The notes under the pieces: generated by a model
What the model was told of the DNA's origin: nothing
The model's database searches: none
The model's input: only the letters and a program-made list of their open reading frames with translations
Program-made: the position numbers and the translations under genes
Assembly (NCBI RefSeq): GCF_006345805.1
Contig: NW_021834887.1
Span: 1 to 47,992 of the forward strand
Source: Octopus sinensis
Lineage: Eukaryota
Direction: 5' to 3'
Length of the DNA: 47,992 nt
Part shown: piece after piece, positions 13,548 through 45,203 of the stretch
How the letters are laid out: each line of letters starts with the position of its first letter
How positions within the stretch are numbered: the first letter of the stretch is position 1

Positions 13548-13883
13548 TATATATATATATATATGCATCAAATGAAATAAAAAACAGAACACAAAGGATG
13601 TCGCGGTACACGTGTTTCAATCTTTATAAAATAACCTATTCTTACATCAATGTGTAATCGACATAACAGATAGTTTAAAGCTCTCTTCAGCCGCATGCAA
13701 TTGCTATACCAAACAATTACATCACATGAAATTATGAAAAATCCGAAAATATACATTTGGTATTATCTATAATGGTGGGTATATTGAGTTTCACTGAGAA
13801 AGTATGTTTGCAAATCTTCATAATCAAATATGTGTGTAGGGTACTTCAAAAATCCGTCCATACTCTATCATCAGTCATTGATA

Positions 13884-18117: not shown

Positions 18118-18223
18118 TTACTCAGTCTTTGCAGGTCTCTCTGCTGCAAATCGGATCAGTCTTTGAGCCAGAGTTGAACGTCTGATGTCGTCACTTGATA
18201 TGTCACTACGTTTTTTCTTGCCG
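18118..18223 (-). CDS. PTH-like neuropeptide precursor, last coding exon: (x)GKKKRSDISSDDIRRSTLAQRLIRFAAERPAKTE*
   Basis: Acceptor gtttctttacacttagttttacttacgattttag|C, phase 2. Open to TAA at 18120-18118, with a donor 12 nt after the stop. Begins with a Gly plus polybasic amidation/cleavage signal. Confidence 0.85.
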
Positions 18224-25828: not shown

Positions 25829-25927
25829 ATTTCAGCAAAGTCAAATTGGCCATGACCAGCCACTTTGCTCATGGCCTTAAGAGCTCTTAATTCGGCTATC
25901 CTCTGGTCGAAGGATGTCCGTTTACCG
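25829..25927 (-). CDS. PTH-like precursor peptide exon 3: (x)GKR-TSFDQRIAELRALKAMSKVAGHGQFDFAE(I)
   Basis: Acceptor aaatttctgattttacttcag|C and donor AAT|GTAGGT; 99 bp, phase 2-2. The DQRxAEL...GxG..D...IG pattern matches what I recall of the iPTH/PXXXamide family. Confidence 0.9.
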
Positions 25928-27148: not shown

Positions 27149-27213
<65 letters not shown>

Positions 27214-27225
27214 TCACTCACGCGC

Positions 27226-27287
<62 letters not shown>

Positions 27288-28366
27288 CACACACACACAC
27301 ACATGCACAAATACTATCCCCTCACACAAACCAATATACCATATAAATTTATGCTGAAATAATTGAAAGTATGATATTAACATGTTATAAACAATTGCAA
27401 TAAATCAAATCATTATATTTTGACAGGCATATTATACAACAATACAGAAGAATGAATATTTTCAAAAACAATGGTTTTGGTGTCATCATTTTACCACAAT
27501 TTTTATAATCGAATTTGGTTTTCATGTTAATGATTCTTCTTTCACCTAACAGAAGAAAATATAGAGAAGTAGGGCAATAAAACAATATAATATCTGGCTC
27601 ATATTTAAGTACAGTATATTAGTGGTATCTCAGTGTGGATCTTATTGCAGTAGTTCGTTCATTCGTTTGTTTGTTCGACGCAACATCTATATTCTGCTGT
27701 GTGATGTAGAAAACAATACAATGATAGGAATATGATTAGGTTACAGAAATTGAATATACGAGTTAATTAGATGAGATTTAAACAAAGAGAAGAAACAGAA
27801 AGCATTTGGAAATGTCATTTCGGAGTGGCTAGAAGCAGCAATATAGTAAACAGGAACCAGTTCGTATTATATACATCACTATAAGCATGTAAAGCGCTCC
27901 CTGTCCACACAGACAAATAAACAAAAATGACCCAAACATACACTTCAAGTCCATGCATGTAAATGGGTAAGCATATGTATATGTATATACATACACACTC
28001 ACACACACATCCACACATCCACACACACATTCAATATATCGTTGTAGTTGTGATTGTGATAGCCCATACCATAACAGTGTCGGAAGTGCAGAGTGAGAAT
28101 ACAGAAGGACTCTAATGAGATTAACTCAACTTCAGGAGATTTAACAGCACAAAGCAAACGACTTAATAAGGTCTACTTTTTAATGGCTGATATTTTTCAT
28201 GGTAAATCACCTACGCATAAGATAATGTAATTAAATATTTTATAAACAAACTTTGTTTTAACTTTCATTATACATAATACATACATGTATGTATGTATAT
28301 ATGTATGTATGTATGTCTACATACGTATGTATGTATGTATGTCTACATACGTATGTATGTAGACAG

Positions 28367-29245: not shown

Positions 29246-29673
29246 ATATATATATATATATATATACTACCCTATTTAAGTAGATTACAAAGGACAAGAT
29301 CATGCGTGTACAAGGGAAATATAATAAAAATAAATATAAGGGTGTAAATATGTTTTTAATACCTACAGTAACTGCAACATTATCTATAATTACAGTAATA
29401 ATACTCAGTTAATGATAAATCAGATGCAAAACTAAGCTACACAACTGTGTGTTTGTGTGTTTATGTGTGTGTCCGTGCCCCTGTCTGTCTATAAGTATGT
29501 GCATATGACAGTGTATATATATATATATATATATATAAATATATATATAATTATAACAATAAGGGTTATTTGCAACAAGTTGCTTAACCACATACCGAAA
29601 ATTTTATATATATATATAAAACTATAGACATATATATATATATTTATAGAACTATAGACACACACACACACAC

Positions 29674-29731
<58 letters not shown>

Positions 29732-32813: not shown

Positions 32814-32933
32814 CTGGCGTTTATATCGACTACCCCACAGGCAACCTCGACACAACCCGGTGGTACAGTGCCAATAAGTGCTAACCATGCTTGGTATTCA
32901 GCTGTTTTAACATCGCCTGTCTGGCGCTTCGAT
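32814..32933 (-). CDS. PTH-like precursor cassette exon 2b: (x)SKR-QTGDVKTAEYQAWLALIGTVPPGCVEVACGVVDINA(S)
   Basis: Acceptor gtgttgttttacctatttacag|A and donor CAG|GTACAG; 120 bp, phase 2-2. Dibasic site, N-terminal Gln and C-x4-C motif; paralogous to exons 2a and 3. Confidence 0.9.
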
Positions 32934-33574
32934 CTGTAAATAGGTAAAACAACACACAAATGGACATCAACAATAATGACAGAACAATTTGACAGGTCGA
33001 TAAGAAACAAACGTTATAAATACGAGAAGGAATGCGAAGGAAAATTGCACATATCAACGTAAAAGGTAATGACAACAAAATAAAATCAATACTGCTTTTT
33101 GTAATAACATAACAATTATAATGTGACCAACTATGTGAAATGTGAGGAACGGGTATCATTGGATAAAGATAACTATAGAAGAGGCAATGGAGTTTTACTG
33201 GAAATGGAGGTGGTTGGTAGGGTAGCACGATATTCCTTTAACAAATGGTCGAAATATTTACTTAAATATTACTATATACACGTGCATATGCGTGTATGTG
33301 TGCGTAAAATGGCCATATATATATACTTGTACATTAATATCTGTGTATATGCATATACTATTTATATGCATTAAATGATCTATGGAAATTGAACTCCGAG
33401 TCTGCTGTAATGTGTATAGCCGTGTTAACTACGACACAAGAGTGATAAATTATTTAGCTACCTAAATCAGAAGTTTAACCAAGCCATATTAGCGGCTTAT
33501 GAAGTGTGAACCTCAGCCCACACAGTATGAAGGTAGAGTACTATGTATAATATACATATATAAGCGTGTGTGTG

Positions 33575-33623
<49 letters not shown>

Positions 33624-33851
33624 AATATTTATGAATGAAATGGTACAAAAATTTGAACTGTAAAAATTGAATCTATCATTGCTACGTTATTAATTATTGG
33701 TATAACACAAAACACGAAAAAAAATATTAACAATGTAATGCATTGACCATTTACTTAAGGATTTGAGGCGGGTAAGTGAGAAAGGGCTTTGGTTTAGGTC
33801 TTGACTAGGTAAAAGGATAGTGTTTGGGGGTTGAACTAGAGCTTACTATAC

Positions 33852-33965
33852 CTCTTTTCAATATCAACTAACCCACACGCTACCTGGGTGCAGGTAATGT
33901 TTCTGGACAATGCCATCAGTGCCCGATACTCAGCCGCTCGCATATCAGCTAGCTGTCGTTTAAAT
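33852..33965 (-). CDS. PTH-like precursor cassette exon 2a: (x)FKR-QLADMRAAEYRALMALSRNITCTQVACGLVDIEK(S/R)
   Basis: Acceptor atttctacaacccctgcttacag|A and donor GAG|GTATAG; 114 bp, phase 2-2. Clear protein similarity to exon 2b (KRQxxD..AEY.A..AL....C..VACG.VDI). Confidence 0.88.
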
Positions 33966-34228
33966 CTGTAAGCAGGGGTTGTAGAAATGCATGCATTACA
34001 TAAGGTGTTCTGTTACATATTCTCTTTATATCATACATAGCTTGAACACTTTTCAAAAATATGATCCATATACCGAAATATATTTTTATGTCAAAATTGA
34101 ATCCATTACTTTTCATACAGTGTCTGACTTAACGAGAATTGTTTATAGTTGCTAAGCCTGGACCACTGCACAAATTAGCTTAACAGTCTGTGGGTTACGT
34201 AACATTTTCTACTTAGCTAATGGATACC

Positions 34229-34459
34229 TATTTTTTTATTACCCACAAGGGGCCAAACACAGAGGGAACAAACAAGGACAGACATAGGTATTAAGTCGAT
34301 TACATCGACCCCAGTGTGTAACTGGTACTTAATTTATCGACTCCGAAAGGATGAAAGGCAAAGTCGACCTCGGCGGAATTTGAACTCACAACGTAACGCA
34401 GACGAAATACCGCCAAGCATTTCGCCCGGCGTGCTAACGTTTCTGTCAGCTCGCCGCCT
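34229..34459 (-). mobile_element. tRNA-derived SINE (family 2)
   Basis: Minus-strand head aggcggcgagctgacagaaacgttagc...gagttcaaattccgcc, followed by the gtcgactttgcctttcatcctttcgg core. Confidence 0.85.
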
Positions 34460-39350: not shown

Positions 39351-40646
39351 GTTTTTATCACAGGTTTTGTTGAAGCGCCCCCTGAAGTCTTGCATGCATA
39401 GCGGGCTTGCTACCTACAGCGTACGGGACCATGCTATTCGTTCTTTCCAGGTATCTAATACTTTCCTGATTATTCTGGCCGTGCCAAGCAGGCAAACCTT
39501 TTGTAACAGTTCCACTGGGCACTCTATTCCAATTTCCTTTATATTCCTCTTGATGCCTTCTGATACTGTTCCCAAGGATCCAACAATAATTTGCATTATC
39601 TGCACCTTCTTCCGTTTCCACAGCCGGGTTAAGAGGGTTGTATTTATCTAACTTTTCGCTTTCCTTCTGGACTATTCGGGGAACAAAGGGGCATGCAACT
39701 TCAACTATATAGAATATGTGGTACATGTCGTCCACCACCACTAGGTCCGGTCTGTTCTGCTCTAGCCCCTGATCTGTTGGATTGGGAAATACCAAGGGAT
39801 TTTGCTAGTCTCCAGTTCCACTACTCTGTACAGTTTGTGTCCATATCAAGTCTTGCCTCTCTCTAGCCCCCACTTTTCACACTTTCGCTACCTGATTGTG
39901 TCGTCACCCCTTGTAGTGGTTTTGGAAAGTCTAGGGCATTCGATCGTGATATGGTCAATGGTTTCATCCACTCTATTGCAGATGCAGCACAGCGGTTTGA
40001 CCCTCCAGTTCGTGACCAGATCGTGGTTTTGAGCTACCGCTATAGTACTCTCGGTCTCTTTTTTTAGGGTTCCTTTCATCAGCGAATCCTACCTATTTTT
40101 TCCAGCAACTTCTCTAGTAGCTACATATAATTGATTGTGTAGTCCCCTGCGTAATTCTTCTTCATATCCTTTTTCCCCTTCATCCTTTGTTTTCCATTTT
40201 TACTCTGCTCTCAATAATCCCTCGTTCCAATCTATCACTAAAAAGGTTTCCTCACTTTGGGCTAGGCATCTCATTAAGCTCTCGAGTTCGATACGCACGC
40301 AGTCTTCCATACTCACCGGTCCCCTTCCTCCATTTGCTCTTTTCATGTATAGGCAATCAGTGTCTGCACGTGGATGATGGGCTCCATGCATCGTTAGGAG
40401 CTTTCTTGACTTTCAATCCATCTCCTTTAGCTCCTCTGTCCACTTCGGGATTCCAGCACCATAGCGAACTACTATGACTGTTCGTGAGTTTATTGCCGAA
40501 ATGCTTCTAGCATTCAGCTTTGAAGTCAATATTTTTCTCATTTGCCGCAAGTACTCTCCTTTTGTCTTTTCCTTTATGATGTGGTGTTTGATTCTATCTG
40601 CCTCAAGTATTGCCAGGTTGAATTGCCTTCATTATTTCACCTCGAG
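39351..40646 (-). mobile_element. RLE non-LTR retrotransposon (R4/Dong-like), copy A, 5'-truncated
   Basis: HHPRADTDCLYMKRANGGRG, CCICNRVDETIDHITIECP (CCHC knuckle), NRPDLVVVD..IVEVACPF..QKESEKLDKY (RLE), IIVGSLGTV..LLQKVCLLGTARIIRKVL. Confidence 0.9.
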
Positions 40647-40739: not shown

Positions 40740-42745
40740 TTTGTACAGATTCTAACGCTGGAAATGTACTACCGTGTCAGCTGTTCGCTACCAGTGTACT
40801 AAGGTAATTCCCCTTATTTTTCGAGCACCTTCCGGAGTTTTCGAGCGGTTCCAAGCAGTGCTGTTTTCTGCAAGTGTTCCAACCTTATTGTAGCCCTATC
40901 TGTTCCATGTATTTGATTTTTTTACACACTGTTCCCAGGGCTCCGACAATTATTGGTACCACTACCACCTTTTTCATTAATCACAATTTCTTTACCTCCC
41001 AAGCTAACCTATCATATCTATCGACTTTTCTTTCTTTGGCTAATCGTTGAGAGGACGCTGGTGTTGCCTTGGCCTAGGTTTGTGCTCTAGTATGTATATA
41101 TATTTTTTATTACGAATGCAAAACAACACCACAGAGGAATCGACGTAAGCTTGAATAATAAACCGCGATAGGTGAATCGCGATATGGTGAGGGATTACTG
41201 TATTTAAATTATCGCATACCTTCTTGTCAGCTGGGTATGCTATATCTATGATCCAGCATAGTTTGGTTTCTTTCTCTATTAAGACTATGTCTGACTTCCT
41301 ATTCTCTGTCTTATGGTCACACTGAATCATAAAATCCCACGGGATCTTTGCATTATCATTTTCGATTATGCCTTCGGTGTTGTGGTCGTACCAATTATTT
41401 CTCTGTGAAGTCCATACTTGTTGCAAAGTTTGCAATGGACAAGCCTTGCTATATTGTCGTGGCGTCTCTTATATTCCTTCAGGGTTAGTGGCATACATTG
41501 GCTGGTAATATGCCATACGGTTTCACCGTTTTGTCTACAAATTCTGCATTTATCACTTTCTGATGTGTTGTTTACTCTGTATTTTATGTAGTTTATTCTT
41601 TGTGCTTGCTCTTGGACAGCACAGATTAGAGCCTCCGTTTTAAATCATTATATGTCATCCACAGCCATCATTTTTCTCTGTCTGTCTTATCTTTAACATC
41701 CCTATAAAATTGTCCATGCATTCTTTTCTTTACCAATCTATTTTCAGTTTCAATCGTTTTCAATTGATTGTACAATGCTTTATCTTTGCAATCTTTCATC
41801 CTACACAAGGCTGACCTTCTTACTTCTCATAATAGCGTTTCTGTGGCATTTTTTTACATACCATTCTATGTTGTTTTCTTCTGTTGTAATGCTGTGTTCG
41901 CATCCAATAAGTCCTCTTCCCCCTCTTTTTCTTGGTACATACAGTCTGCCTGTGTCACTTTTTGGGTAGAGTGTCCCATATCTAGTTAGCAACTTCCTTG
42001 TCTTTCTGTCTAAGCTGCTTAGTTCGTCTACTGTCCATGCGATCACCCATGCTCCATATCTAAGGAGTGAAACTGCCCAGGTGTTGACAGCTTCAATCTT
42101 ATTCTGTCCATTTAATTTCAACTTAAGGATCAGTCTCAGTCTGCGCAAGTACTCCACTTGAAACTTTTCTGTAGTTTCTTTCTCCATCAATTCATCCATT
42201 TCCAAAATTCCCAAATACTTATAGCCCGTCTCTTCTATCTGCTCCATAACCTCCCCCGACGGTATCGATAGCCCGTCCATACATTTGATTTTGCCTCTCT
42301 TCAAGACTAACACACCACACTTTCTCAGTCCGAACTCCATTCTGACATCAGCACTGAAAATATACATCGTATCAACGAGGGAATTGACTTGGGTTTCATC
42401 TTTATCATAAAGTTTGAGATCATCTATGAATAACGAATGGTTGCCTTTTTGTTGGCGGCTTTTGAATACATACCCAGCTTTTGCTTTCCTCAGCATCAGT
42501 GTTAGTGGTATCAAGCACAGTACAAAGATCAGTGAGAACGGGCAGCCCTCCTGGAAGATGCCCCTCCTGATTTCTACTGTCCCTAAACTTCTTCCGTATG
42601 CTCTTAGGGCCGTCCTCCAATTCGCCATACTTTTTCCAAGCAATCGCTCAAAATTCCATTATCCAAGTGATCTTATCGTACGCCTTACGATAGTCGGTCC
42701 ATGACATGGCTAAGTTACTTTTCCTCCTCTTGAAGTCTCTAAGTA

Positions 42746-43357: not shown

Positions 43358-43798
43358 GTTCAGTAGTTTTATTTTTATAGCGTGCTTTCACTTCACTACC
43401 GAGCGCAGCTCTGTGTGCCTTGGGTATGTGCTGTGATTTGTTGTGATGCTCTGATGGTTATTGTATGGAAAGCGTTCTGCGTAGGATGTGTGCAGTGCCT
43501 AGTAGTGCAATTTTCTGTATGTTATATGTGTTTGTAAGTCCTGGTGTTTTTGTTATGTATTTGTCTGAATATTTTTTTATCATGCCTAATGCACCTACTA
43601 TGATAGGAATTGTTTCTGTTTTCAGGTTCCACATTCTAGTTACCTCTATTTCCAGGTCTTTGTATTTTGAGAGTTCCTCCATTTCTTTTAGAGACACGTT
43701 GTCATCTGTCGGTATTGATACATCAATTAGAAAGCATTTTTTTTCTTCATGATCTCTGACAACTATATCTGGTCTGTTGGCCTTAATTTCTCTATCTG

Positions 43799-43800
<2 letters not shown>
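43358..43800 (-). mobile_element. RLE non-LTR retrotransposon (R4/Dong-like), copy D, 3' end only
   Basis: RPDIVVRDHEEKKCFLIDVSIPTDDNVSLKEMEELSKYKDLEIEVTRMWNLKTETIPIIVGALG...QKIALLGTAHILRRTLSIQ* plus 3' UTR. Confidence 0.9.
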
Positions 43801-43852
<52 letters not shown>

Positions 43853-44207
43853 TATTATTATTATTGTTGTTGTTATTATTAGTAGTAGTATTGTTATTTT
43901 ATATTAGTTTTGTCTATATTATATTTTACGAATCTTGGAAACAAGTGGCGCTTAGCGTTTAATAATTATTAACTGCTAAGCACCACTTGATTCCCCGAAT
44001 CCGAATTTTCTCTATATATTGTGCGTAAGAGATGTGATTAATTACAACAAGCTATCGCGTTAATTAAAACAAAGTTAAATGTATCATGTGTGGGAATTTT
44101 AAAATGATCTACACGTTTCTGTATAACAACGACTTGCAATAATTTTTATGAAAGCAATCTTTTAATTATGACGTTATTAAAAATATTTCAATATAAAAAT
44201 TGCTTAC

Positions 44208-44296
44208 TTCAATTCTTCTTCTGGGATATATCGTGCATTTACAAGAGAAACTAGCACCATGCCAACAATGCTAAGTATTAAAATGTGTCGTGTCAT
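44208..44296 (-). CDS. PTH-like precursor first coding exon, signal peptide: MTRHILILSIVGMVLVSLVNA-RYIPEEEL(K)
   Basis: Acceptor cttctctcatttgatttcag directly precedes ATG; donor GAA|GTAAGC; 89 bp, ending phase 2. Basic N-region, hydrophobic core and V-N-A cleavage motif. The phase matches all downstream exons. Confidence 0.85.
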
Positions 44297-45203
44297 CTGA
44301 AATCAAATGAGAGAAGACATAAATGATGTGAAATGGATATGAAATTCCAGCACGCAAAGCGTCAATTATGCGATTATTAACAAACATGAAAAACATTAAA
44401 CCGTTCAAAAAGTAATTTCTTAATATGCACCGTTCTTCTTTCCAAGGATTCTATTAACGTTACTTGTATTTAACCCTGGAAGAAATTCCGGTAAATATTC
44501 TATATATTTCAGCCATCAAAATGAAACCAGCGGATACCTTATCACAATAATCAGTGTTGACATATAGCAAGTAGTAATTACTTAATTATCCTTACATTAG
44601 ATTGGCCCCAGAGAAATGCTTCTGTCAAATGGAATCATAATCTGAAATCACTTGCCTATTCTCAAGAACAATTCCCCAAACGAGTTACTTATTGCCTTTT
44701 CCTGTTGCCTGGATTAACATTTTTGTTTGGATATCAACAGAACATGGGCCCTTTGATTCGGCAAAAGTACTAAAGTCTACTGAGGTCAACAATGTAGAAG
44801 TCGTTATTGTTGTTTAGTCCCAGAAGATCCGTGATTGAACTGGCCTACGATCAAACGCATTCCAGCAGCGATATAGAGTTGCTACATCTAGTAAACCTGT
44901 CGAGCACGTAGACGTTCCGTTTGCTGGCTCAAATTATACATGAGCCGGTGCAATGGAAGAATATTGTTGAACGATGCAAAAGCACTAAAATACTGACGGA
45001 TTTATCTTTGATTTTACACATTCTGGACATTGTCATATGAAACTGGCAGGAGACAGGGTCATCTTAGGCTGAACAAATAAGTGTAACATTCGTTCGAATG
45101 ATTATAACCACGTATCAACGTACACTTGAAGTCACACGTCATGTATCCGTAAATATTTGTATGTGTGCGTGTACAGTGTGTATGTGAGTGTATGTATGTA
45201 TGT

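What the first reader, a model, noticed from the sequence alone, without database searches (positions are those of the whole stretch)
32814..33965. Probable mutually exclusive cassette exons encoding two disulfide-ring PTH-like peptides
Exons 2a and 2b are duplicates with matching ends. Both begin A-(F/S)KR-Q and both end in AG, which becomes Ser-Gly-Lys-Arg only when spliced to exon 3 or 4. Splicing 2a to 2b instead gives DIEK-R-SKR and destroys 2a's amidation. The simplest reading is either/or use, a calcitonin/CGRP-like ligand switch in a PTH-type gene. The 918-bp spacer is too long for steric exclusion, so a regulated mechanism would be needed.
Basis: partly seen in the sequence, partly recalled or inferred. 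Interest (0 to 1): 0.9.

Follow-up and report, generated by a model that had tools for sequence, protein, structure and literature searches.

The report
Octopus QSamide/iPTH neuropeptide alternative exons
The two look-alike exons are real alternative exons of an octopus neuropeptide gene of the QSamide/PXXXamide ("insect PTH") family. This either/or exon layout is already published for the sister gene in Octopus bimaculoides and for other molluscs, so the finding is correct but not new.

Summary
On the minus strand, exon 2a (33965-33852, 114 nt) and exon 2b (32933-32814, 120 nt) are paralogous, frame-preserving AG/GT cassette exons. Each encodes KR-Gln...Cys-x4-Cys-Gly-(L/V)-Val-Asp...; the final AG becomes Ser only when joined to the C of exon 3 or exon 4, which also supply Gly plus basic residues.

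The window is a 47,992-bp unplaced Octopus sinensis scaffold carrying LOC118761766 (RefSeq model: exons 1-2a-4). The gene belongs to the QSamide/PXXXamide (= iPTH) precursor family. Exons 2a and 2b are QSamide-type; exon 3 (25927-25829) is the PXXXamide/iPTH-type third alternative.

Xie et al. 2020 (S1 Table) list O. bimaculoides transcripts 1-2a-4, 1-2b-4 and 1-3-4. The same layout is listed for Sepia, Lottia, oyster, annelids and a termite. Oyster isoforms were confirmed by transcripts and mass spectrometry.

Strict exclusivity at this locus is inferred, not shown. I found no docking/selector pairing.

New details:
- The window is a diverging paralogue (A) of the chromosomal gene (B).
- Its exon 3 begins with a derived Gly.
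- Its coding differences are almost all nonsynonymous.
- A second haplotype carries a B-type gene-conversion tract over exon 2b.

The parts
44208..44296 (-). Coding exon 1: ATG plus signal peptide MTRHILILSIVGMVLVSLVNA and RYIPEEEL. It ends in AA (phase 2); the donor is AA|GTAAGC. An acceptor-like tttcag lies directly before the ATG, which suggests an upstream non-coding exon.
33852..33965 (-). Cassette exon 2a (114 nt, phase 2-2). It encodes FKR | QLADMRAAEYRALMALSRNITCTQVACGLVDIEK(S), a QSamide-type peptide with a Cys-x4-Cys ring. The donor AG|GTATAG is weak.
32934..33851 (-). 918-nt intron between 2a and 2b. It contains a (CA)22 microsatellite (window 33579-33622) found only in A-type loci.
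32814..32933 (-). Cassette exon 2b (120 nt, phase 2-2). It encodes SKR | QTGDVKTAEYQAWLALIGTVPPGCVEVACGVVDINA(S), a QSamide-type peptide. The donor AG|GTACAG is weak and is conserved in Argonauta.
25829..25927 (-). Cassette exon 3 (99 nt, phase 2-2). It encodes GKR | TSFDQRIAELRALKAMSKVAGHGQFDFAE(I), the PXXXamide/iPTH-type peptide. It starts C-GGT (Gly) here but C-GTT (Val) in the B gene. The donor is AT|GTAGGT.
18118..18223 (-). Common last coding exon 4. It encodes GKKKR | SDISSDDIRRSTLAQRLIRFAAERPAKTE and the TAA stop. It supplies the Gly plus basic amidation/cleavage signal to whichever cassette precedes it.
41801..42658 (-). Reverse-transcriptase-like open frame (retroelement fragment) inside intron 1. 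It is not part of the gene product.

Best explanation
The interval holds two of three alternative, frame-neutral cassette exons of an Octopus sinensis neuropeptide precursor gene (LOC118761766). The gene is a paralogue of LOC115211866 (O. sinensis) and LOC106873782 (O. bimaculoides) and belongs to the QSamide/PXXXamide (= 'insect PTH', iPTH) family.

Gene layout:
- Exon 1 supplies the signal peptide.
- One cassette is then chosen: 2a or 2b (QSamide-type) or 3 (PXXXamide/iPTH-type).
- Common exon 4 follows. Its first base completes the last codon (Ser or Ile), and it provides Gly-Lys-Lys-Lys-Arg.

Inferred processing, from textbook prohormone chemistry:
- signal peptidase cleavage;
- prohormone-convertase cleavage at KR/KKKR;
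- carboxypeptidase trimming;
- amidation of the residue before the Gly, by the peptide-amidating enzyme (PAM);
- cyclisation of N-terminal Gln to pyroglutamate;
- a Cys-x4-Cys disulfide.

This would give either pQLADMRAAEYRALMALSRNITCTQVACGLVDIEKS-NH2 or pQTGDVKTAEYQAWLALIGTVPPGCVEVACGVVDINAS-NH2.

By family analogy, the peptides are predicted to act on a PTH-receptor-type family B receptor.

Shown here: the exon anatomy, the junction logic, family membership, and conservation across loci. Inferred: one-at-a-time use in this gene, peptide maturation, and the receptor.
For: - Exon anatomy and junction codons.
- The window is the O. sinensis scaffold carrying XP_036355813.1, whose model is 1-2a-4.
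- Other RefSeq models are 1-2a-3-4, 1-2b-3-4 (twice) and 1-2b-4. None joins 2a to 2b.
- Xie et al. 2020 S1 Table lists O. bimaculoides transcripts 1-2a-4, 1-2b-4 and 1-3-4. It lists analogous alternative transcripts in Sepia, Lottia, Crassostrea, Lingula, Phoronis, annelids and Zootermopsis.
- The oyster QSamide3/PXXXamide gene shows differential splicing with peptides detected by mass spectrometry.
- The alignment of 2a and 2b with published QSamide peptides shows the N-terminal Q, the conserved D, the C-x4-C-G-(L/V)-(V/I)-D ring and the terminal Ser.
- The exons, their boundaries and their weak donors are conserved in five Octopus loci. 2b, 3 and 4 are also conserved in Argonauta.
- The B gene is under strong purifying selection: exons differ by 1.7% and introns by 6-14% between species.
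Against: - No RNA-seq, cDNA or peptide data for this locus could be examined.
- The O. bimaculoides 'transcripts' in the S1 Table are not flagged 'transcript found', so they may be partly conceptual.
- Every exon combination stays in frame, so nothing structural forbids co-inclusion.
- RefSeq models and an oyster transcript show two cassettes together.
- One ab initio O. vulgaris model (P0003) joins 2a, 2b and 3.
- The A copy shows no purifying selection: 10 nonsynonymous against 1 synonymous difference versus O. vulgaris A, Ser->Phe in the conserved SD motif, and Leu->Pro in exon 4. It may therefore be losing function.
- No receptor is proven for QS-type peptides in any lophotrochozoan.
Confidence: 0.85

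Rival explanations
1. The cassettes are combinatorial rather than mutually exclusive. A QS exon (2a or 2b) is often co-included with exon 3. In this A paralogue that would yield two fully amidated peptides, because exon 3 starts with Gly-Lys-Arg.
For: - RefSeq models 1-2a-3-4 (O. sinensis B) and 1-2b-3-4 (O. bimaculoides, Argonauta).
- Oyster transcript 4 and Pomatoceros transcript 2 carry two cassettes.
- Exon 3 begins C-GGT in A-type loci but C-GTT, ACT or SYKR elsewhere, so the Gly is a derived feature of this copy.
Against: - In the B genes, co-inclusion gives S-V-KR, which destroys QS amidation and argues against it being the main product there.
- Gnomon models may chain exons without full-length support.
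- The window's own model skips exon 3.
Confidence: 0.3
2. Both 2a and 2b are constitutively included, so one precursor carries both peptides and 2a ends without an amide.
For: - All exons are multiples of three, so read-through is in frame.
- The O. vulgaris ab initio protein P0003 contains 2a-2b-3.
Against: - P0003 lacks exon 1 and the signal peptide and runs into a non-homologous 3' end, so it looks like an ab initio artefact.
- No RefSeq model joins 2a to 2b.
- Published orthologue transcripts are separate.
- The conserved AG|C split codon, with Gly supplied only by exon 3 or 4, makes a 2a-2b junction lose the family's invariant C-terminal amide.
Confidence: 0.04
3. The window copy is a decaying duplicate. 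It is poorly expressed or not expressed, and its exon architecture is merely inherited from the functional chromosomal gene.
For: - pN/pS is 3.1 versus O. vulgaris A and 1.2 versus B. Exons diverge as fast as or faster than introns: 2.1% against 1.25%, p=0.11.
- Ser->Phe in the highly conserved SD motif, and Leu->Pro in exon 4.
- The second haplotype, C8327, has a 1-nt deletion in exon 3.
- All A-type contigs are unplaced.
Against: - All open frames, AG/GT sites, cysteines, dibasic sites and Gly are intact in the window and in O. vulgaris A after speciation.
- RefSeq calls a gene here.
- The deletion in C8327 may be a long-read assembly error.
Confidence: 0.25

Closest known systems
QSamide/PXXXamide (iPTH) precursor gene of Octopus bimaculoides (LOC106873782) and O. 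sinensis chromosome gene LOC115211866
   Same: - Identical five-exon layout, exon sizes, phases and splice sites.
- Exon 2a is 97-100% identical in DNA.
- The same three alternative cassettes are listed as transcripts 1-3 in Xie et al. 2020 S1 Table.
   Different: - The window is a separate paralogue (A). Downstream of 2b it is 8-10% diverged from the B gene.
- It has five amino-acid changes in 2b.
- Exon 3 starts with Gly instead of Val and has many further changes.
- It shows no sign of purifying selection.
Crassostrea gigas QSamide3/PXXXamide gene (Realis-Doyelle et al. 2021, PMC8398477)
   Same: - One gene with alternative cassette exons encoding either a Cys-ring QSamide or PXXXamide peptides, all joined to a common 3' exon that supplies G-R-R-K-R.
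- Isoforms were verified by transcripts and mass spectrometry.
   Different: - Oyster has one QS and two PXXX cassettes, whereas octopus has two QS and one PXXX.
- A two-cassette transcript is documented in oyster.
Tribolium iPTH and its receptors iPTHR1 and iPTHR2 (Xie et al. 2020)
   Same: - Orthologous precursor family.
- Exon 3 of the window matches the iPTH-type motif (x-S-D-Q-R-I/L-A-E-L...G-basic).
   Different: - The beetle gene has a single peptide with no Cys-ring alternative.
- Receptor activation was shown only for the beetle peptide.
- There is no sequence similarity to vertebrate PTH (<12% identity).
Calcitonin/CGRP (CALCA) switch and the Lymnaea FMRFamide gene (from my own knowledge)
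   Same: One gene gives different peptide ligands in different cells through alternative exon choice.
   Different: - CALCA uses alternative 3' terminal exons with polyadenylation choice, and the calcitonin ring is N-terminal.
- Here the exons are internal, frame-neutral and paralogous, and the ring is C-terminal.
Docking-site/selector mutually exclusive splicing (Dscam, 14-3-3 xi type; from my own knowledge)
   Same: Tandemly duplicated alternative exons whose intervening intron is too long for steric exclusion.
   Different: No conserved intronic element and no above-background complementarity was found.

Membership tests
QSamide/PXXXamide (iPTH) neuropeptide precursor family | Signal peptide followed by a dibasic site immediately before the peptide | tested here: met
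   The sequence reads MTRHILILSIVGMVLVSLVNA...EELK-(F/S)KR|Q. Exon 1 is identical in amino-acid sequence (29/29) to that of the published O. bimaculoides precursor locus. No signal-peptide predictor was run.
QSamide/PXXXamide (iPTH) neuropeptide precursor family | QS-type peptide: N-terminal Gln, Asp at position 4, C-x4-C-G-(L/V)-(V/I)-D ring, C-terminal Ser followed by Gly and basic residues | tested here: met
   Both 2a and 2b align column for column with published Sepia, Lottia, Crassostrea, Platynereis, Capitella and Lingula QS peptides. Ser-Gly-basic is created at the splice junction.
QSamide/PXXXamide (iPTH) neuropeptide precursor family | PXXX/iPTH-type peptide with the conserved S-D-Q-R-(I/L)-A-E-(L/I) start and a C-terminal Gly-basic amidation signal | tested here: inconclusive
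   Exon 3 gives TSFDQRIAELRAL...FAEI-GKKKR. The motif and the amidation signal are present. However, the 'highly conserved' Ser of SD is Phe in both O. sinensis A haplotypes (it is Ser in O. vulgaris A and in all B genes), and the Pro at position -4 is absent in Octopus.
QSamide/PXXXamide (iPTH) neuropeptide precursor family | Common 3' exon beginning G-(K/R)n that is shared by all alternative cassettes | tested here: met
   Exon 4 is at 18223-18118 and encodes GKKKRSDISS... It has the same position and phase in all six loci.
QSamide/PXXXamide (iPTH) neuropeptide precursor family | Alternative (one-at-a-time) use of the cassettes in mRNA | not testable with these tools
   No read or cDNA data were available. 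The support is indirect: published orthologue transcripts and RefSeq models.
QSamide/PXXXamide (iPTH) neuropeptide precursor family | Ligand of a PTH-receptor-type family B GPCR | not testable with these tools
   This has been shown only for Tribolium iPTH. It is explicitly unproven in Lophotrochozoa.
Vertebrate PTH/PTHrP/TIP39 | Sequence homology to the PTH family | tested here: not met
   There was no Pfam hit to a PTH family at E<=10 for three isoforms and no PDB sequence hit. Xie et al. report <12% identity.
Mutually exclusive exons enforced by a known mechanism (steric hindrance, U2/U12 incompatibility, frame/NMD, docking-selector RNA pairing) | One of the following: an intron too short to splice; mixed U2 and U12 splice sites; a frameshift on double inclusion; or conserved competing RNA pairings | tested here: not met
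   - The intron is 918 nt.
- All sites are GT-AG U2-type.
- All cassettes are multiples of three.
- No conserved intronic blocks are shared between Octopus and Argonauta.
- No complementary runs exceed the dinucleotide-shuffle null, apart from microsatellites that are not conserved between the paralogues.
- Short or imperfect pairings could have been missed.

The most novel reading that the evidence does not exclude
The A paralogue in the window may be neofunctionalising rather than redundant or decaying. Three observations allow this reading.

- Its peptide-coding exons accumulate almost only amino-acid-changing substitutions.
- Exon 2b is polymorphic through an exon-sized gene-conversion tract from the B gene.
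- The derived Val->Gly codon at the start of exon 3 would turn the ancestral either/or cassettes into a combinatorial system. Co-inclusion of a QS exon with exon 3 would then release two amidated ligands from one precursor.

How a single cassette is selected across 0.9-7 kb introns, without detectable RNA pairing, would also be a new mechanism.
Probability: 0.15. Interest if true: 0.5.

Novelty: new member of a known kind. Interest (0 to 1): 0.25.

Why it matters
The finding shows that a tool-free reader correctly deduced an alternative-splicing ligand switch from junction-codon logic alone.

Biologically, it documents that octopuses of the O. vulgaris/sinensis group carry a second, fast-diverging copy of the QSamide/iPTH gene. 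That gene is unstudied in cephalopods: its receptor, its expression pattern and its exon-choice mechanism are all unknown.

If the QS-type and PXXX-type peptides act on different PTH-type receptors, the gene would be a compact model for how exon duplication plus alternative splicing diversifies family B receptor ligands. The core phenomenon, however, is already in the literature, so the gain is incremental.

Tried and rejected
- **Pfam and PDB.** Pfam scans of three conceptual isoforms and a PDB sequence search gave nothing relevant.
- **Exon 2a in Argonauta.** I searched with tblastn, a motif regex over six frames and a global alignment of the upstream region. None found it. The apparent colinear similarity upstream is a tRNA-like SINE that recurs elsewhere.
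- **Possible fourth cassette at window 28006-28071(-).** This was a weak tblastn hit. It is TG-rich low-complexity sequence and was rejected.
- **Docking/selector search.**
  - A first duplex-energy scan timed out.
  - A pairing-run scan of the 300-nt flanks of each cassette against the whole 26-kb pre-mRNA found nothing above dinucleotide-shuffled controls except microsatellites.
  - The (CA)22 downstream of 2a, which could pair with (UG)n in the 2b-3 intron, is absent from the B gene and from O. bimaculoides. It is not a conserved mechanism.
- **Phylogeny of QS peptides, to date the 2a/2b split.** The tree was unresolved with only 37 columns.
- **Literature searches.** Searches for LOC identifiers, QSamide/QSGamide and cephalopod PTH found no later functional work.
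- **Technical failures.** One search failed on a file path. One search was swamped by microsatellite hits and was redone with filtering.

Full report
**Observation**

The gene lies on the minus strand. Reading 34100-32700 in reverse complement shows two exons with canonical boundaries.

| Exon | Window coordinates | Length | Acceptor | Donor |
|---|---|---|---|---|
| 2a | 33965-33852 | 114 nt | ttacag\|A | AG\|gtatag |
| 2b | 32933-32814 | 120 nt | tttacag\|A | AG\|gtacag |

The two exons are separated by a 918-nt intron. Their translations are:
- 2a: FKRQLADMRAAEYRALMALSRNITCTQVACGLVDIEK
- 2b: SKRQTGDVKTAEYQAWLALIGTVPPGCVEVACGVVDINA

A tblastn of each peptide against the whole window finds the other at 50% identity over 36 residues, with E about 5e-8. 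The first 20 residues encoded by a third exon (KRTSFDQRIAELRALKAMSK) also resemble the start of 2a.

**Full coding structure**

| Exon | Window coordinates | Content |
|---|---|---|
| 1 | 44296-44208 | ATG, signal peptide; ends in AA |
| 2a | 33965-33852 | QSamide-type peptide |
| 2b | 32933-32814 | QSamide-type peptide |
| 3 | 25927-25829 | 99 nt; PXXXamide/iPTH-type peptide |
| 4 | 18223-18118 | GKKKR, spacer peptide, TAA stop |

Every boundary is AG/GT. All three internal exons are multiples of three and are in phase 2-2.

- Exon 1's AA plus the first A of either exon gives Lys, followed by (F/S)KR-Q.
- The final AG of 2a or 2b becomes Ser only with the C that opens exon 3 (C GGT AAA CGG) or exon 4 (C GGC AAG AAA AAA CGT). 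This gives Ser-Gly-Lys-Arg or Ser-Gly-Lys-Lys-Lys-Arg.
- Joining 2a to 2b gives DIEK-R-SKR, with no Gly.

**Identity**

A protein search with the conceptual product returned six cephalopod proteins. One of them sits on a contig of exactly 47,992 bp: XP_036355813.1, 'uncharacterized protein LOC118761766 [Octopus sinensis]'. Its sequence is exons 1-2a-4 of this window.

| Gene model | Exons used |
|---|---|
| O. sinensis LOC118761766 (the window) | 1-2a-4 |
| O. sinensis LOC115211866 (chromosome) | 1-2a-3-4 |
| O. bimaculoides LOC106873782 | 1-2b-3-4 |
| Argonauta hians | 1-2b-3-4 |
| O. vulgaris model P0008 | 1-2b-4 |
| O. vulgaris ab initio model P0003 | 2a-2b-3 |

P0003 lacks exon 1 and ends in non-homologous sequence. 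Pfam and PDB give nothing.

The literature gives the family.
- Xie et al. 2020 (PMC7224569) showed that the peptide first called PXXXamide in Sepia is the ligand of the insect PTH-receptor orthologues, and renamed it iPTH.
- Their S1 Table lists three O. bimaculoides transcripts: transcript 1 (1-2a-4), transcript 2 (1-2b-4) and transcript 3 (1-3-4).
- The same table lists two Sepia transcripts, three Lottia gene-2 transcripts and four Crassostrea gene-1 transcripts. It also lists alternative Cys-ring and non-ring transcripts in Lingula, Phoronis, Pomatoceros, Capitella and the termite Zootermopsis.
- Realis-Doyelle et al. 2021 (PMC8398477) recognised the Cys-ring forms as QSamides. [quoted passage not shown]
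- Thiel et al. 2021 (PMC8557429) confirmed QSGamide/iPTH precursor orthology. They stressed that receptor pairing is unproven in Lophotrochozoa.

Aligning 2a and 2b with the published QS peptides shows the family hallmarks column for column: the N-terminal Gln, Asp at position 4, C-x4-C-G-(L/V)-(V/I)-D, and the terminal Ser.

So 2a and 2b are QSamide-type cassettes, and exon 3 is the PXXXamide/iPTH-type cassette. The switch is three-way, and it is already described for the orthologue.

**How it most likely works**

Shown here:
- the anatomy and the split-codon design;
- that the Gly plus basic signal is supplied only by exon 3 or exon 4;
- that none of the four RefSeq models joins 2a to 2b.

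Inferred from standard prohormone processing:
- convertase cleavage at KR and KKKR;
- carboxypeptidase trimming;
- amidation of the residue before the Gly, by the peptide-amidating enzyme (PAM);
- pyroglutamate formation and a Cys-x4-Cys disulfide.

The result would be one 35- or 37-residue pGlu...Ser-NH2 peptide per transcript.

Inferred by family analogy only: action on a PTH-receptor-type family B GPCR.

**Mechanism of exon choice**

The known classes of enforced exclusivity do not apply.
- The intron is 918 nt, so steric exclusion is ruled out.
- All sites are U2-type GT-AG.
- Every exon combination stays in frame, so there is no frameshift or NMD filter.

The donors of 2a (AG|GTATAG) and 2b (AG|GTACAG) depart from the consensus at positions +4 to +6. 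The 2b donor is conserved in Argonauta. This is typical of regulated cassettes.

I looked for docking/selector pairing and found none.
- Between Octopus and Argonauta only the exons plus about 25 nt of flank are conserved. No deep-intronic block survives.
- A scan of the 300-nt flanks of each cassette against the 26-kb pre-mRNA found no complementary run above dinucleotide-shuffled controls, except microsatellites.
- The (CA)22 repeat 230 nt downstream of 2a, which could pair with (UG)n in the 2b-3 intron, is present only in A-type loci.

The mechanism therefore remains unknown. Strict exclusivity is also not demonstrated: RefSeq models join a QS exon to exon 3, and oyster has a two-cassette transcript.

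**The window is a paralogue**

The O. sinensis assembly holds three copies of the 2a-2b region:

| Copy | Location | Identity to window (2a-2b region) |
|---|---|---|
| B gene | chromosome C5, 126.79-126.82 Mb | 91% |
| A, window | unplaced scaffold C11358 | 100% |
| A, second haplotype | unplaced contig C8327 | 99% |

An isolated exon 4 also lies on C11597. O. vulgaris has a complete A-type gene and a B-type model on one chromosome. Three distinct sequences in one assembly, together with both types in O. vulgaris, argue for two loci: B, and A with two haplotypes.

The A and B copies form a mosaic. Intron 1 through 2a is about 99% identical, whereas sequence downstream of 2b is 8-10% diverged.

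C8327 matches the B gene and O. bimaculoides at every one of about a dozen sites where it differs from the window between 33545 and 32821. It is identical to the window downstream of that. It therefore carries a B-derived conversion tract covering exon 2b. It also has a 1-nt deletion in exon 3.

**Selection**

| Comparison | Exon divergence | Intron divergence | Nonsynonymous : synonymous | pN/pS |
|---|---|---|---|---|
| B gene, O. sinensis vs O. bimaculoides | 1.7% | 6-14% (best-aligned introns) | 6 : 3 | 0.63 |
| A copy, window vs O. vulgaris A | 2.1% | 1.25% (p = 0.11) | 10 : 1 | 3.1 |
| A vs B within O. sinensis | 5.3% | 5.0% | 22 : 6 | 1.2 |

- The B gene is strongly constrained.
- The A copy shows no sign of constraint.
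- The window peptide from exon 3 has Phe in place of the family's conserved Ser of the SD motif, and exon 4 has Leu->Pro.
- Against decay, all frames, splice sites, cysteines and processing sites are intact in both species.

**A derived feature of the A copy**

Exon 3 opens with C-GGT (Gly) in A-type loci. It opens with C-GTT (Val) in B genes, ACT (Thr) in Argonauta and SYKR in Sepia. Only in the A copy, therefore, would a QS exon spliced to exon 3 keep its amidation signal.

**Age of the 2a/2b pair**

Argonauta has only the 2b-like exon, and only a 2b-like form is listed for Sepia. Exon 2a is about equally distant (49-54% identity) from octopus 2b and from the Lottia and oyster QS peptides. 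The tree is unresolved.

**Verdict**

The phenomenon is known for the orthologue and across protostomes.

The window adds a new, diverging paralogue with a few interesting but untested twists. No step needed to be referred.

Noticed in passing
window 25927-25925 (first full codon of exon 3), compared with L011-L013 (C5), L018, L019 and L020: Exon 3 starts C-GGT-AAA-CGG (Gly-Lys-Arg) in the window, in C8327 and in O. vulgaris A. It starts C-GTT (Val) in the chromosomal B gene and in O. bimaculoides, ACT (Thr) in Argonauta, and SYKR in Sepia. Only the A paralogue would keep QS-peptide amidation when a QS exon is spliced to exon 3.
   Followed up: partly
window 33545-32821 versus G000:C8327 (L015): The second A-type contig, C8327, is about 99.8% identical to the window downstream of exon 2b. 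Across about 725 nt covering exon 2b it carries B-gene and O. bimaculoides alleles at every site where it differs from the window. This looks like an exon-sized gene-conversion tract that makes the 2b peptide polymorphic (five amino-acid differences).
   Followed up: yes
window exons compared with L020 (O. vulgaris A) and C5: Coding differences in the A copy are almost all nonsynonymous: 10 nonsynonymous against 1 synonymous versus O. vulgaris A. Exons diverge at least as fast as introns. By contrast, the B gene's exons are about 5-fold (4-8-fold by intron) more conserved than its best-aligned introns.
   Followed up: yes
window 25912-25910 (exon 3) and 18134-18132 (exon 4): The family's highly conserved Ser of the 'SD' motif is Phe (TSFDQRI) in both O. 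sinensis A haplotypes but Ser in O. vulgaris A. Exon 4 has Leu->Pro (AERPAKTE). C8327 also has a 1-nt deletion in exon 3, which is either a frameshift or an assembly error.
   Followed up: partly
window 44207-33966 (intron 1) compared with C5: The A and B copies are about 99% identical from intron 1 through exon 2a (exon 2a is 100% identical) but 8-10% diverged downstream of 2b. In intron 1 the window is closer to the O. sinensis B gene (0.86%) than to the O. vulgaris A gene (2.0%). This suggests ongoing concerted evolution of the 5' half.
   Followed up: partly
window 33579-33622; also 27210-27303 and 29658-29714: A (CA)22 repeat in the pre-mRNA lies 230 nt downstream of exon 2a, and (UG)n tracts lie in the 2b-3 intron. 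They could pair and loop out exon 2b. The CA tract is present only in A-type loci, so it is not a conserved mechanism.
   Followed up: yes
window 41801-42658 (-); also 39358-39804, 41040-41468 and 43458-43898 (-): There are retroelement remnants in intron 1. One is a 285-aa open frame with a weak reverse-transcriptase match (RVT_1, E = 0.004). Three other open frames share an ...RPD(I/L)VV...(I/V)D(V/I)(A/S)xP... motif. tRNA-like SINE copies are also present (e.g. gene-sense 13600-13770, which is window 34223-34393).
   Followed up: partly
window 44297-44305: An acceptor-like tttgatttcag sits immediately before the ATG and is conserved in all Octopus loci and in Argonauta. This implies an unannotated upstream 5'-UTR exon, so 'exon 1' is probably the second exon.
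   Followed up: no
L019 (Argonauta hians): The Argonauta locus has exons 1, 2b, 3 and 4 but no 2a. Its 2b would end in Asn-amide rather than Ser-amide, because the split codon is AA|T (AAT, Asn) rather than AG|C.
   Followed up: partly
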